A DNA stretch of 64,000 bases, taken from positions 127,056,526 through 127,120,525 of the forward strand of contig NC_083403.1 in the NCBI RefSeq assembly GCF_020745735.1, read 5' to 3'. Within the stretch, counting starts at the first letter, position 1; every line of letters starts with the position of its first letter. Of the stretch, positions 19,601 through 25,600 are shown piece after piece. Source of the DNA: Hemiscyllium ocellatum. Its lineage: Eukaryota. Under the pieces are notes generated by a model, which worked only from the letters and a program-made list of their open reading frames with translations, made no database searches and was not told where the DNA came from. Made by a program: the position numbers and the translations under genes.

Positions 19601-22600
19601 GGACAGCACTGCTTTGAGCTTGCAGAATGGTTAGCTATGTACGGTATTTCAAACTCTAAAGTAAGTATGAGCCTGTGAACAAACAGATTGTAATTTTATG
19701 TGGTTGATTCCTCTGTATTTCAGAAACTAATGTTTAAAGTATGCAAACTTAAAATATAAACTACTATGTTTTTTACTTTTTTATCAGATTATACTGATTT
19801 GGCAATGAGTACGGTGACGCAGACACAGGCCATTCAGTACTCAGGATCTTTAATGCTACTGGCACAACATCTTCAGATCATTGCGGGTTTGTATATAATT
19901 CTGCTTTCTTTTAATCCCTCCTCTTTCATGAAGCTGCTAACTACTGGCCATTGGCCATCATGCCTTACCTTGCATTATTGACTATTTTTCACTTGAGTCT
20001 AGACAGTGAGTGCCCAAGAAAACAAGAATTGGGAGCAAGTGGAGGCCATTTGGCCCCCTCAAACCTGCTCTACCTTTCAATTAGTCATGGCTGGTTTAAT
20101 TGTGGTTTCATCTTCCTTACGTGCTGTCCCTGTCCCCATCCTAGTAGTCTTTGACTTCTGTGTCAATCAGAAGTCTTGTCTATCTTGGCCTTGATTGACC
20201 CAGTTTCTACTGCAGTCTGAGGAAGAAAATTCCTTAGATTAAGGGCCTTGAGAATTAAAAGTATGATATTTGTGCATAGAAGAATGGCATTGATACTCTT
20301 GCCTTTGACTGGGTCTAACAGCCTAATTGGTTTAAAGTAGTACAGGGTTAACCAGGAGAAACCAATTGGTTGGAGCATTGTGCAATCTTCAGCGATAACC
20401 TTTTAAGAACCATTACGTTTTGCAACATCTCCCTAAAGTTTTTCCCCATCTCCATAGTTAACACTTGTGCATATTTACCACTACCCCATCTGCCCAGGTC
20501 TCCTGATGTCACAAATTCAGGTGGTCTAGAGGTTTCAAGGTCTTCCAGAACACATTCTCTTCAGACTGTGAACGATTGTCCAGCTTTTGCTTTAAGAACT
20601 GTTGACTGATTTTGTTCTTGTCCTTGAATGGTCTATAAACTGTCTAATCAGTCGAGCACCTTTTTATCTGTTGGATGTCCTTTTATAGAAGATGCTCTAC
20701 TAACCCAGGTGGTTGGTCCATTCCCTTAACTGGAGGACCATGAACCTCCTGAATTTCCTTTTTAAGCCATCTTCCTAGCTAACTCAGGAAGTTGTCCTTA
20801 ACATCAGCTTAAAGGTCCCCCAAAATAATGAATGTCTATTATAGCAGATACCTGCTCTGTGGAAAGAAAGGTATGTTCCTCTTCACAATATCCTGGAGTT
20901 TTGAGCCAGTGAGTTTCTTGTTTTCACCTATATCCAGAATCTGTGGACGTTGGACTGGCTTGTATGGAATTGCATGCGGCTTATATTCGTTCAACTTTAT
21001 TTACAGTCTGCTTATAACTCTGTGGTGAAGTATGTAAATTATTTCCTTCAACTTGTTGGTAAGGTTGGATATTTTCAATCCTCAGTATTTGTTGCACTGG
21101 TGAACCAGGCATTATTCCATCGGCTGGTACTTTATTTTTGCTTCTCAGATCGGAATTCCTGTGGTCAGTTGCTCCTACATTTCTGCCCTCCTTACATAGT
21201 TATCTCAACACAGATACGCCAACCAAATGGCGCATTCTGCTCACGTCCTTCACTGCCGCACCATTTTGCTTATTCAGTCAACAAGGGAGAGCATTTTGAT
21301 TTGAGGACCGGTGTTCCTGTCAGAGATGACTGTGTTATTGTATCTTGATCAAATGTGTTCAACAAATCAGATATACAGAAACTATCCGGTATCTTAGAAT
21401 TTTAAACACTTCATGCATTTAACTTCAGTTCTTAAGTTCTAACTATTGCTTTTGAAAGAAAAATTATAAGCATTCTGATTTAACAACTTTTTACTCTTAA
21501 GATGATGTGGAAGAAATCGAAGTTCAGGATAAGCCAGCACTGAGAATCTTCAAAGCTATCACATTGGTTCAAGAGCCAGGCATGATTGTGCTGGAGGTGA
21601 GTTTATTGTATTTCCTTTCCAATGTTTTTCTCCTTTCTTTAAATAAGAAGGACAGACAAATTTGCATTTATATTTTCGTGAACAGCAGCTGCCCAGAAGT
21701 GCTTTGCAGCCAATGAAGAGCCTTCACTGTAGGGAAAATGAGAGTCAATGTTCACAGAACTCTTGAAACTTCAAGAGTGAGCGGCACGGTGGCACAGTGG
21801 TTAGCACTGCTGCCTCACAACGCCTGAGACCCGGGTTCAATTCCTGACTCAGGCGACTAACTGTGTGGAGTTTGCACGTTCTCCCCGTGTCTGTGTGGGT
21901 TTCCTCTGGGTACTCCGGTTTCCTCCCACAGTCCAAAGATGTGCGGGTCAGGTGAATTGGCCATGCTAAATGGGCCAATTTAGTAGGTAATGGGGTAAAT
22001 GTAGGGGTATGGGTGGGTTGCGCTTCGGCGGGTTGGTGTGGACTTGTTGGGCCGAAGGGCCTGTTTCCACACTAAGTAATCTAATCTAATCTAATCTTCA
22101 ACTTAAATTATGTTTGGACAGGAATGTATGACTAAATCTAAAACTGGCATTACGCTGTCTGTAACTGTTGATGGTAAAGCAGCGAATGTTTTTCTGGATA
22201 CATGAGCAAGTATTCACCATTTTGTGACTGAGTCACATGATTGCTAATGTGCAAGATGGGACAAACTCTTTTGCTTCATTTCATGTTATGCACTCTTGCC
22301 CAAACCTGCTGTTCCCATCCTATAATTGCTTCCTGGCATGTCAACAGTCAAACAAACAGGAGGCTGAGGCTGCATATTCCGAACATTGTTCTGTCATGTA
22401 TATCTAGGAAATGTGCAGTTATAAACAAATTAATTAGGTTCTTCATTCAGAGAGTAGTAGGGGCGTGGAATGCCCTGCCTGCAACAGTAGTAGACTCGCC
22501 AACTTTAAGGGCATTTAAATGGTAATTGGATAAATATATAGATGATAATGGAATAGTCTAGGTTTAATGGGCTTCAGTTGGTTTCACAAGTTGACGCAAC

Positions 22601-25600
22601 ATCGAGAGCCTGTACTGCGCTGCATTGTTCTATGTTCTAACTTAAGTGCTCAATCAGACTTATAGATCAGCACTCCCAATTGAACTACTTGTCAATATTG
22701 CCCAACTCCTCAGTAGCCATTGTGGAGTCATTATTGATATTTGCTGGGTTTTCAGGTGACTGCACTTTTTTATTCTAACAACTGAATGATATTCATGACT
22801 TTTTTTATGTAACTGCATATATTTTCTCATGCTATTCTGTAATTTGTGACTGGGATCAAGTTAGCAAACTATCGCGTGATTAAACAAACTGAATTTGCTC
22901 TTTCAGAAATGCTGTTTATCTAAAACCTTTATTTCTCCTTTTAGTGGGTGGCAAATCCATTAAATGATATGTATGCGGATGCAGTGATGACAGTGATTCT
23001 GGAAGTGCAGTCAAACCCGAAAGCACAGAAAGGTACGTGCACTTGCATAGCTTCCATTTTTGCTTCTTCATGTATGATCTTGCTTCTTTAAAGCAGTTTT
23101 GTTCCACCTCAGCTGAAAACATCACCTGTTTTGGAGTGAGTGTTCTTGGAAGCTGGTAACCCTCAAGTACCTTTTCTGCTCATTCTTCTTAAGATTATGA
23201 AACCATTAAGGGATTTTGCAATCTGGACATGATCCGATTGTCACTGCACACATTTCAACAGGCTAGCAGTCAGTAAACTTGATTGATTTTTTTTTCTTTT
23301 CATTTCTAGAATTGAGATCTGTTGAGGGACTGGAAACAGCTGACCTTGTAGAAATTATCTGTCTCAGAACAAGCTCAGAAGTTAAATCTTGAAACTTTTG
23401 TTATCACTGTGTTAGTATGATATAGACCATTCTTTCTCCCCCTAGCCAAAAATGGAAGTGTGATGAATGTAGCTTGCTGAGCTGGAAGGTTTGCTTTCAG
23501 ACGCTTTGTCACCACACTAGCTAACATTATCAATCAGTCTCCGAATGAAGCACTGGTGGTATGGTCCACTTTCCATTTGTGTTTGGGTTTCCTTGGGTCG
23601 GTGATGTCATTTCCTGTGGTGATGTTATTTCCTGTATTGATGCCATTGTCTGTTCTTTTTCTCTGGTGGTGGTGAATGTGATCCAAGTCTATGAATTTGT
23701 TGACAGAATTCCAGTTGAAATGCCATGCTTCGAGAAATTCTCATGCATGTCTCTGTTTGGCTTGTCCTAAGATGGATGTGTTGTTCCAATCGAAGTGGTA
23801 TCCTTCCTCATCTTTATATAAGGATATTAGTCGTTTTGTGGCAAGTTAATATTCATGTATCCTGGTGGCTAGTTTTCAGCCTGTTTGTCCAATTCAGTGT
23901 TTATTACAGTTCTTGCACGGTATTTTGTAAATTACATTAGGTTTGCTTGTTGTCTGTATAGAGTCTTTCAAGTTCATTAGCTGCTGTTTTAGTGTGTTGG
24001 TGGGTCTGTGGGCCACCATGATGCCAAGGGGTCTGAGTAGTCTGGCAGTCATTTCCGAGATGTCTTTAATGCAAGTGAGAGCGGCTCGGGTTTCTGGACG
24101 TGTTTTGACTGCTTGTTTGGGTTTGTTGCTGAGAAATCGACAGATTGTGTTAGTTGGCCGTTCTTTTTGAATACACTGTATAAATGATTTTCCTCTGTTC
24201 TCCATAGTTCCTCTGTGCTGCAGTGTGTGGTGGCTCATTGAAATAATGTTCTAATGAAGCTTTGTTTGTGAGTGTTGGGATGATTGCTTCAGTAGTTTAG
24301 TATTTGGTCCGTATGTATTGTTTTCCTGTAGACGATGGTTTGAAGTTCCCCATTGACTATTCGCTGTACTGTGACATCGAGGAATGGCAGTTTGTTGTTG
24401 TTTTCCTCCTCTTTTAGAGAGTTTTATGCCAGTAAGGGTATTATTGATGGTCTTAAAGGTTTCCTTTAATTTGTTTCATTTAGTGATGACAAAGATGTCA
24501 TCGTAGCGGACCCAAAGCTTGGGTTGAATGGTTGGCAGAGCTGTTTGTTCGAGTCTGCATTACAGACTCTGCTAAGAACTCTGTTATTGGAGATCCCATG
24601 GGTGTTCCATTGGTTTGTCTGTAGGTTTTGTTGTCGAAGGTGAAGTGGGCGGTAAGGCATAGGTCCACAAGCTTGATGATACTGTCCTTGCTGATGAAGT
24701 TGGTGGTGTTTGGTCTATGTATCTTTGGTTCTTCTAATAGTGTAACCAGTGTTTCCTTGGTCACGTTGATGTTGATGGATGTGAACAGGGCTGTTACATC
24801 AAAGGAGACCATTATTTCATCCTCTTCTGTATTGATATCTTTGGTCTTCAGGAATTCTTGGGTGGAGTGGATGGAGTGACGTGTGTCTTCTACTAAGTGT
24901 TTAGTCTTTGGCGTGGCTCCTTGGTCAGTCTGTAAATTGGTGTTCCAGGTAGCAAGACTATGAGTCTGAGGGGGGTCTCCTGATTTGTGAATTTTGGTTA
25001 ATCCATAGAAGTGTGGTTATTTTCGGATCTGTCTCGTTTCATTTTTTTTGGAAGTCGGTCTTATTTATTTCTCCAGATTTCTGAAGTTTTTGAGTAGGGC
25101 TGTGATTTATATCTGTAGTTGTGGGAGTTCGGTCTATCGCCACATGTAGGTAAGAGTTGCTATCTGATGCGTACAGATGAGGAAGGACACCACTTCAACT
25201 GGGACAACACATCCTAGGACAAGCCAAACAGAGACATGCATGAGAATTCCTAGAAGCATGGTATTCCTACCGGAACTCTATCAACAAACATGTTGACTTG
25301 GATCCATTTACCACTATCTGAGAAAAAGAACAGGAAACAATGTCACGACAGGAAATGACATCACCAATCCAAGGAAACCTAAATACATAAGGGCCATATC
25401 ACCAGTGCTTCATCCAGAGGCTCACTGATGATGCTACCTAGTATGGTGATGAAACATCTGAACAACTGTGTTCAGCTCAACAAGCAAACCTACATCCAGA
25501 ACCTCAACCTGAGCTACAAATCTTCTCAAAACTCACTAAATGGAACTGTGATGTTTTGTTGCATGTGAGGGTTTACTGCATTCTGTTTCTGATAAGGAAC

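What the first reader, a model, noticed from the sequence alone, without database searches (positions are those of the whole stretch)
22100..22647. CPSF3 exon 17 copied back into its own intron 14, apparently by CR1-tail-primed retrotransposition of pre-mRNA
Seen: 22109-22638 is a colinear copy of 28727-29272, made of exon 17 (minus its first 3 nt and acceptor), about 240 bp of unique intron 17 and a sense CR1 3' fragment. The copy stops exactly at the CR1 terminal TTCTATGTTCT repeat. It is 5'-truncated inside the exon and flanked by AACTTAAAT (22100-22108) and AACTTAAGT (22639-22647), a 9-bp TSD with one mismatch. The tail resembles that of the young CR1 at 48253-49780. Established: CR1-clade RTs recognise their own 3' tail rather than poly(A). 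Inference: an intronic LINE tail turned unspliced host RNA into a substrate, mobilising upstream host exon sequence and inserting it 6.6 kb away in the same gene. This would be an exon-shuffling route distinct from L1 3' transduction. The copy has CGG changed to TGA at the exon end and looks dead.
Basis: partly seen in the sequence, partly recalled or inferred. Interest (0 to 1): 0.8.

Follow-up and report, generated by a model that had tools for sequence, protein, structure and literature searches.

The report
CPSF3 exon fragment retro-copied via CR1 tail
A 530-base piece of a shark CPSF3 gene (most of one exon, the intron behind it and the tail of an old CR1 jumping-gene fragment) was copied 6.6 kb upstream into another intron of the same gene. 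The most likely cause is that the CR1 copying enzyme started on that intronic tail in unspliced RNA; the copy is dead, and the mechanism was already predicted from known biology.

Summary
Window 22109-22640 is a colinear copy of 28727-29273 (495 matches, 35 mismatches, 8 indel events, K2P 0.07). It comprises exon 17 of CPSF3 minus its first 3 nt, 237 bp of unique intron 17, and a 211-bp sense CR1 3' fragment.

Homology stops at the last base of the CR1 tail, plus a 2-nt AA overlap. It starts inside the exon. The insert is flanked by AACTTAAAT and AACTTAAGT (empirical P about 0.007 with generous slack). It lies in intron 14, on the same strand.

Derived changes sit on both copies, so the duplication is old and real. 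A 5'-truncated CR1 in the window, with an open RT reading frame, carries the same hairpin and TTCTATG tail.

My best reading (about 0.7) is target-primed reverse transcription of unspliced CPSF3 RNA, started at the intronic CR1 tail.

K-mer shares in relatives are ambiguous. A local DNA-level duplication is therefore not excluded. A second ~500-bp local duplicate in the same window has no LINE tail.

The mechanism follows from the known biology of stringent LINEs, and its outcome resembles SVA/L1 5' transduction. The copy has no acceptor and an in-frame stop. I rate it a new variant of a known kind, of moderate interest.

The parts
22100..22108 (+). Left target-site duplication, AACTTAAAT
   Evidence: It abuts the first base of homology.
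22109..22205 (+). Dead copy of CPSF3 exon 17. It lacks the first 3 nt and the acceptor and ends in TGA where the source has CGG.
   Evidence: 7 differences in 97 nt, comprising 4 amino-acid changes (V>M, N>I, I>V, S>F), the 2-nt CGG>TGA stop and 1 synonymous change.
22206..22434 (+). Copy of the first 237 bp of intron 17. The sequence is unique, and the GCAAGT donor is kept.
   Evidence: 4.8% different, no other copy in the window.
22435..22638 (+). Copy of the sense CR1 3' fragment. It ends in TTCTATGTTCT, and 8 bp of the hairpin (GGCCGAAG) have since been lost.
22639..22647 (+). Right target-site duplication, AACTTAAGT. Its first two A's could equally come from the source RNA.
28724..28823 (+). 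Source: CPSF3 exon 17 (100 nt), followed by a GC donor (CGG|GCAAGT).
28824..29060 (+). Source: unique 5' part of intron 17.
29061..29271 (+). Source: 5'-truncated CR1 3' fragment in sense orientation. It has an intact two-tier hairpin (GGGCC-GAAG-GGCC, about 29231-29244) and a terminal TTCTCTGTTCT.
21781..22099 (+). SINE-like short repeat of about 310 bp, multi-copy in the window. Its (TAATC)n tail ends exactly at the insertion point.
   Evidence: alignment A1. ARAGORN finds no tRNA gene in it.
21504..21596 (+). CPSF3 exon 14, upstream boundary of the host intron.
22945..23032 (+). CPSF3 exon 15, downstream boundary of the host intron.
   Evidence: PF11718 relatives.
48253..49780 (+). Young 5'-truncated CR1-type LINE copy with the same hairpin and (TTCTATG)n tail. 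It is the candidate family of the enzyme.
   Evidence: It has a 482-aa open frame with RVT_1 at E = 1.2e-35.

Best explanation
An RNA running in the CPSF3 sense direction, most simply unspliced or intron-17-retaining pre-mRNA, contained a 211-nt CR1 3' fragment about 240 nt into intron 17. That fragment still had the CR1 hairpin and terminal TTCTATG-type repeat.

A CR1 reverse transcriptase/endonuclease, supplied in trans by an active CR1, bound this internal tail. It nicked the DNA of intron 14 just before AACTTAA, with a 2-nt AA overlap, and began reverse transcription at the tail end. It copied backwards through the intron into exon 17 and stopped 3 nt short of the exon start. Second-strand nicking 9 bp away produced the AACTTAART duplication.

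Shown: the colinear copy, the exact tail boundary, the flanking repeat, the sense orientation, a partner LINE with the same tail, and neutral decay of both copies since the event.

Inferred: the RNA intermediate, the identity of the enzyme, and priming at an internal tail.

The product is a non-functional pseudo-exon. Its own tail hairpin is now damaged, so it is unlikely to move again.
For: 1. The 3' end of homology falls at the last base of the CR1 tail in both copies, and nothing beyond it aligns except AA. From the 11 hairpin motifs in 64 kb, I estimate the chance of a random breakpoint landing within +-2 nt of a suitably oriented LINE tail end at about 1e-3.

2. There is a 9-bp flanking repeat with one mismatch, P about 0.007 even with +-3 nt slack.

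3. The 5' end lies at an arbitrary point inside the exon, as with 5' truncation.

4. The tail is in sense orientation to CPSF3 transcription, so the pre-mRNA carries it as a usable 3' signal.

5. At the time of copying the tail was canonical. The copy and a young CR1 share TTCTATGTTCT and CATCGAG, while the source has since mutated. The source and the young CR1 fold into the same two-tier hairpin.

6. A CR1-type copy with a 482-aa open RT frame and the same tail lies 20 kb away.

7. All three tails of this kind in the window are followed by AA.

8. It is established that stringent LINEs, CR1 included, recognise their own 3' hairpin and microsatellite rather than poly(A), and mobilise any RNA carrying it (PMC4176376, PMC3747384, PMC5729268 citing Suh 2015).

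9. Intron 17 has a GC donor. From general knowledge, such donors are associated with weaker splicing. That would favour RNA with exon 17 still joined to intron 17.

10. Unchecked notes of this scan report other host pre-mRNA pieces with CR1 tails in this genome.
Against: No splice junction lies inside the copy, so nothing proves an RNA intermediate.

Landing 6.6 kb from the source, in the same gene and orientation, is very unlikely for a freely diffusing RNP in a genome of gigabase size. It needs an added assumption: use of chromatin-tethered nascent RNA.

A second local duplicate of about 500 bp and similar age in the same window (50085-50576 against 52567-53066) has no LINE tail at its ends. 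Some other local copying process therefore operates here.

The only other datable CR1 insertion in the window has a 3-bp TSD, not 9 bp.

The insertion point coincides with the end of another retroposon's tail, which could point to structure-prone DNA.
Confidence: 0.7

Rival explanations
1. Local DNA-level duplication. A replication template switch or repair synthesis copied 530 bp from 6.6 kb downstream into intron 14 and re-entered 9 bp back, which mimics a TSD. No RNA and no LINE enzyme were involved.
For: It explains the short distance, the same orientation and the same gene without extra assumptions. A second local duplicate of about 500 bp and 94.5% identity in this window has no LINE tail at its ends. 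Both the source breakpoint and the target lie next to hairpin-plus-microsatellite tails that could stall a fork.
Against: It needs a coincidence. The breakpoint falls at the very last base of the CR1 element rather than in its hairpin (my estimate about 1e-3), and there is also a 9-bp flanking repeat (P about 0.007). There is no microhomology at the 5' junction.
Confidence: 0.17
2. An RNA-templated event that did not depend on the CR1 tail. Nascent CPSF3 RNA was reverse-transcribed during repair of a nearby break, independently of the endonuclease, or by another reverse transcriptase. The tail boundary is then fortuitous or only reflects an RNA 3' end.
For: It accounts for the local landing site. 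Reverse transcriptases are plentiful in this genome, and chimeric CR1 retro-insertions have been reported by the scan.
Against: The same boundary coincidence applies as for the DNA rival. The TSD and the AA after the tail match the other tails of this kind in the window.
Confidence: 0.08
3. An assembly artefact, or a member of a multi-copy repeat family that merely contains exon-like sequence.
For: Junction-spanning reads could not be inspected.
Against: Runs from four samples and two studies of the same species hold 0.54-0.92 of the insert's sampled 31-mers. Only 8% of the insert's 31-mers are shared with the source. The two copies differ by 7%, with derived changes on both. The exon plus intron part has exactly two copies in the window.
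Confidence: 0.03

Closest known systems
Trans-mobilisation by stringent-type LINEs through a shared 3' tail (SINE/LINE pairs; eel UnaL2, zebrafish ZfL2; CR1-mobilised SINEs of passerines)
   Same: The reverse transcriptase recognises a hairpin plus terminal short repeat, not poly(A). Any RNA carrying the tail can be copied. The copies end at the tail, are 5'-truncated and carry TSDs (PMC4176376, PMC3747384, PMC5729268).
   Different: The carrier here is a Pol II host pre-mRNA piece with an exon and an intron, not a Pol III tRNA-headed SINE. The tail is internal to the RNA. Only one copy was made, so this is not a family.
5' transduction and exon trapping by SVA and L1 (for example the MAST2 exon 1-SVA_F1 subfamily)
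   Same: Host sequence upstream of an intronic retroelement, exon sequence included, is carried along because transcription started upstream in the host gene (PMC4859970).
   Different: Those events use the poly(A)-dependent L1 machinery and usually spliced RNA, and the element is itself mobile. Here the element is a dead 211-bp CR1 stump, the RNA is unspliced, and recognition is through the CR1 tail.
L1 3' transduction (exon shuffling as shown by Moran and colleagues; my own recollection, not checked here)
   Same: A LINE machinery moves flanking host sequence.
   Different: There the flank lies downstream of the element and depends on read-through to a later poly(A) site. Here the flank lies upstream and no poly(A) is involved.
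Chimeric CR1 retro-insertions made by template switching
   Same: The CR1 enzyme copies non-CR1 RNA and leaves it attached to a CR1 tail with a TSD (PMC5729268).
   Different: No template switch is needed here. Exon, intron and CR1 stump are already contiguous at the source locus.
Processed pseudogenes (L1-type retrocopies)
   Same: A host gene fragment copied through RNA, 5'-truncated, with a TSD.
   Different: There is no poly(A) tail, and the intron is retained rather than removed.

Membership tests
Retrocopy made by target-primed reverse transcription (TPRT) from a stringent LINE (CR1-type) tail | The 3' end coincides with the LINE 3' terminus (hairpin plus terminal short repeat) | tested here: met
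   Homology ends at 22638/29271, the last base of TTCT(A/C)TGTTCT, plus a 2-nt AA. The hairpin is present in the source and in the young CR1.
Retrocopy made by target-primed reverse transcription (TPRT) from a stringent LINE (CR1-type) tail | A target-site duplication abuts both ends | tested here: met
   AACTTAAAT and AACTTAAGT match at 8 of 9 positions. The empirical P is 0.007 with +-3 nt slack.
Retrocopy made by target-primed reverse transcription (TPRT) from a stringent LINE (CR1-type) tail | The tail lies in sense orientation on a transcribed strand at the source | tested here: met
   The CPSF3 exons and the CR1 stump are both on the + strand.
Retrocopy made by target-primed reverse transcription (TPRT) from a stringent LINE (CR1-type) tail | An autonomous partner with the same tail exists in the genome | tested here: met
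   48253-49780 has the same hairpin and tail, a 482-aa open frame and RVT_1 at 1.2e-35. Full-length activity and timing were not tested.
Retrocopy made by target-primed reverse transcription (TPRT) from a stringent LINE (CR1-type) tail | The orthologous empty site collapses to one TSD copy | not testable with these tools
K-mer shares in relatives are ambiguous. Protein-handle and metagenome routes found no close relative.
Retrocopy made by target-primed reverse transcription (TPRT) from a stringent LINE (CR1-type) tail | Direct sign of an RNA intermediate (spliced junction, RNA-only sequence) | tested here: inconclusive
   The copy stops inside exon 17, so no exon-exon junction could be present. 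The retained intron fits either pre-mRNA or DNA.
CR1 clade of LINEs (identity of the tail) | A 3' hairpin followed by a terminal repeat of the AUUCURUG kind | tested here: met
   The tail is (TTCTATG)n after a GGGCC-GAAG-GGCC hairpin. Compare AUUCURUG in amniote CR1 (PMC5729268). The clade was not tested by RT phylogeny.
L1-type processed pseudogene | A poly(A) tail and loss of introns | tested here: not met
   There is no A-run at the 3' end, and 237 bp of intron are retained.
DNA-level segmental or tandem duplication | Breakpoints unrelated to mobile-element termini and no TSD | tested here: not met
   The breakpoint sits at the CR1 terminus and a 9-bp flanking repeat is present. This lowers the rival but does not exclude it.

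The most novel reading that the evidence does not exclude
Intronic CR1 tails in sense orientation make nascent, still chromatin-tethered host pre-mRNA a substrate for CR1 enzyme inside the nucleus, so the copy lands close to its own gene. In CR1-rich genomes that would be a recurrent route to intragenic duplication of exon-plus-intron pieces. It would also help explain why such genomes have few ordinary retrogenes yet do carry scattered host-RNA pieces with CR1 tails.
Probability: 0.2. Interest if true: 0.75.

Novelty: new variant of a known kind. Interest (0 to 1): 0.45.

Why it matters
Genomes dominated by CR1-type LINEs, such as those of birds, reptiles and sharks, are said to make few retrocopies of host genes because the enzyme insists on its own tail. 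This locus is a clean natural example of the predicted exception. A dead CR1 stump in an intron lends its tail to host RNA, and an exon is carried along.

If such events are common and tend to land near their source, they would be an overlooked source of intragenic duplication and of pseudo-exons in these genomes. A simple genome-wide test follows from this: compare sense with antisense intronic tails.

This single copy has no functional consequence that can be seen. It has no acceptor, it carries an in-frame stop, and it has decayed neutrally.

Tried and rejected
There is therefore no read-level check of junctions, empty site or expression.
- **K-mer shares.** Organism B holds 0.23-0.33 and organism D 0.14-0.25 of the insert's sampled words. 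I rejected this as evidence of presence. A species that lacks the copy still carries the near-ancestral source sequence, which could share up to about a third of the copy's 31-mers.
- **Protein handles to reach relatives.** ORFs over exon 17, over exon 15 and inside the copy gave only distant species, where exons alone align at about 80%, or CR1 fragments.
- **Exact look-ups** of ten window ORFs were absent from the collection.
- **Two metagenome scans** with exon 15 and exon 17 patterns gave no hits.
- **Template switching** from a genuine CR1 RNA was considered and rejected. Exon, intron and CR1 stump are contiguous at the source.
- **The reverse direction of copying** was rejected. 28724-28823 is the conserved, spliced CPSF3 exon.
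- **A shared TSD between the upstream SINE and the insert** (AACTT at 21767, 22100 and 22639) was examined and left undecided. The match is no better than about 2% chance.
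Full report
**What is there**

Reading the two stretches and aligning them shows that 22109-22640 is a colinear copy of 28727-29273. There are 495 identical positions, 35 mismatches and 19 gap columns in 8 events, giving K2P 0.070. 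The repeat finder and a window self-BLAST recover the same pair. The exon plus unique-intron part occurs exactly twice in the window.

No homology exists upstream of 22109/28727. Downstream of 22640/29273 there is none either.

**The host gene**

The window carries CPSF3 on the + strand. I used an exon with the [11 protein letters not shown]... motif to fetch relatives and ran tblastn of those proteins back on the window. A distant species' contig added one more exon.

Together these give 18 coding exons, starting at about 1581, 2811, 3304, 5455, 6284, 8104, 11066, 12769, 13911, 16201, 16933, 18565, 19781, 21504, 22945, 27005, 28724 and 31549.

- The source is exon 17 (28724-28823).
- Its donor is GC (CGG|GCAAGT).
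- The copy lies in intron 14, between exon 14 (21504-21596) and exon 15 (about 22945-23032), in the same orientation.

**Anatomy of the copy**

- 22109-22205 is exon 17 without its first 3 nt and without the acceptor. It has 7 differences in 97 nt: four amino-acid changes, one synonymous change, and CGG to TGA (two positions) at the last codon.
- 22206-22434 is the first 237 bp of intron 17.
- 22435-22638 is a CR1 3' stump that starts at 29061 in the source.

The stump aligns with a young CR1-type element at 48253-49780 and with another copy at 43663-43500 on the minus strand.

The source and the young CR1 fold into the same two-tier hairpin around GGGCC-GAAG-GGCC. Both end in TTCTATG-type repeats. 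This is close to the AUUCURUG microsatellite and reverse-transcriptase-binding hairpin described for amniote CR1 (PMC5729268, citing Suh 2015).

The young element keeps a 482-aa open frame with an RVT_1 domain at E = 1.2e-35.

**The junctions**

The tail ends at 22638 in the copy and 29271 in the source. Both are followed by AA, after which the sequences are unrelated.

The insert is flanked by AACTTAAAT (22100-22108) and AACTTAAGT (22639-22647). I tested 20,000 random 530-bp intervals of the same window, allowing +-3 nt at each end and any repeat length from 6 to 20. A flank match this good appeared in 0.7%.

From the density of hairpin motifs (11 in 64 kb on both strands), I estimate the chance that a random breakpoint falls within 2 nt of a suitably oriented tail end at about 1e-3.

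**Age and reality**

I used the two other CR1 copies to polarise the differences in the CR1 part. Derived changes lie on both copies, roughly 8 in the copy and 10 in the source.

- The copy keeps the ancestral CATTTAAAT, CATCGAG and TTCTATGTTCT, where the source has mutated.
- The copy has since lost 8 bp (GGCCGAAG), that is one arm and the loop of the hairpin.

So the duplication is old, both copies have drifted independently, and the tail was canonical when it was copied.

Runs from four samples in two studies of the same species hold 0.54-0.92 of the insert's sampled 31-mers. Only 8% of the insert's 31-mers are shared with the source. This argues against an assembly artefact, although the junctions themselves were not inspected.

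**Mechanism**

Four features make up the signature of target-primed reverse transcription by a LINE that recognises its own tail:

- a 3' end exactly at a LINE terminus;
- a TSD;
- an arbitrary 5' end;
- a tail in sense orientation on the transcribed strand.

Stringent LINEs, CR1 among them, are known to bind the 3' hairpin of their RNA and to mobilise other RNAs carrying it (PMC4176376, PMC3747384, PMC5470649).

The simplest template is CPSF3 RNA in which exon 17 is still joined to intron 17. From general knowledge, a GC donor is associated with weaker splicing, which would favour such RNA. That point is an inference.

Template switching from a real CR1 RNA is not needed, because exon, intron and stump are contiguous at the source.

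I give this reading about 0.7.

**What weakens it**

- The copy ends before any splice junction, so no feature proves an RNA intermediate.
- Organisms B and D hold 0.14-0.33 of the insert's words. A species without the copy still has the near-ancestral source sequence, so these shares fit either state.
- The attempts to reach relatives through ORF handles, exact look-ups and metagenome scans all failed.
For a freely diffusing particle in a gigabase genome that is extremely unlikely. Either the template was nascent RNA still tethered at the gene, or the event was at DNA level.
- The same window holds a second local duplicate of similar size and age: 50085-50576 against 52567-53066, 94.5% identical. 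Its ends are not at LINE tails, and it is flanked by a 52-bp direct repeat that is only 81% identical. Some local copying process that does not use a LINE tail therefore exists here.

I give a DNA-level local duplication about 0.17. An RNA-templated event that did not depend on the tail gets about 0.08. An artefact or repeat family gets about 0.03.

**Comparison with what is known**

The enzyme logic is that of SINE/LINE tail sharing. The outcome, upstream host sequence including an exon carried with an intronic element, is that of 5' transduction and exon trapping by SVA and L1 (PMC4859970).

It differs from those in three ways. It uses a dead CR1 stump rather than a mobile element, unspliced RNA rather than spliced RNA, and tail recognition rather than poly(A).

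It also differs from L1 3' transduction, where the flank lies downstream, and from processed pseudogenes, since there is no poly(A) and the intron is kept.

Other unchecked notes of this scan describe host pre-mRNA pieces with CR1 tails elsewhere in this genome (s1-228444, s1-203508). A 5S-tRNA-CR1 chimera has been followed up (s1-146952). These are leads, not support.

**Verdict**

I rate it a new variant of a known kind, with no visible function, and score interest at 0.45.

The more interesting possibility is that sense intronic CR1 tails routinely turn nascent host RNA into a locally re-inserting substrate. A sense-versus-antisense genome-wide survey would test it.

Noticed in passing
50085-50576 and 52567-53066; flanks 52515-52566 and 53067-53117: A second two-copy local duplicate, 94.5% identical and 2.5 kb apart. 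Neither end lies at a LINE tail. One end is inside an older repeat. The upstream copy is flanked by a 52-bp direct repeat that is only 81% identical, much more diverged than the insert.
   Followed up: partly
21767-21775, 22100-22108, 22639-22647: The SINE-like repeat at 21781-22099 ends exactly at the insertion point. AACTT(C)AAG also occurs 14 nt before that repeat's 5' end. The same nick site may have been used twice, once by the SINE and once by the exon copy, or the match may be chance (about 2%).
   Followed up: partly
28823-28829: CPSF3 intron 17 has a GC donor (CGG|GCAAGT). No in-frame GT alternative exists. The copy keeps GCAAGT.
   Followed up: partly
22597-22610 (copy) against 29226-29247 (source): The copy has lost exactly GGCCGAAG, one arm plus the loop of the CR1 hairpin, between the two GGCC repeats. 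This could be replication slippage after insertion or the reverse transcriptase skipping the stem.
   Followed up: no
48200-48252 and 49781-49900: The young CR1 copy sits inside an older CR1-like reading frame (…ISRGLEYK | TRDVLLRLCK…). Only AAG is duplicated, a 3-bp TSD. TSD length in this family therefore varies.
   Followed up: partly
23472-23816 and 25172-25485: Inverted arms of about 340 bp, 75-88% complementary, enclose about 1.4 kb in CPSF3 intron 15. The pair looks like a hairpin-type element or a pair of inverted repeats.
   Followed up: no
1741-1912 and 1954-2125: A 172-bp direct repeat, 94% identical, with 213-bp spacing, just after CPSF3 exon 1.
   Followed up: no
L003 (Logan contig ERR13098443_143449), 2395-3141: In a distant species the intron between the exon 14 and exon 15 homologues is only about 550 bp. 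That is close to the window's intron 14 once the SINE and the insert are removed (about 490 bp).
   Followed up: no
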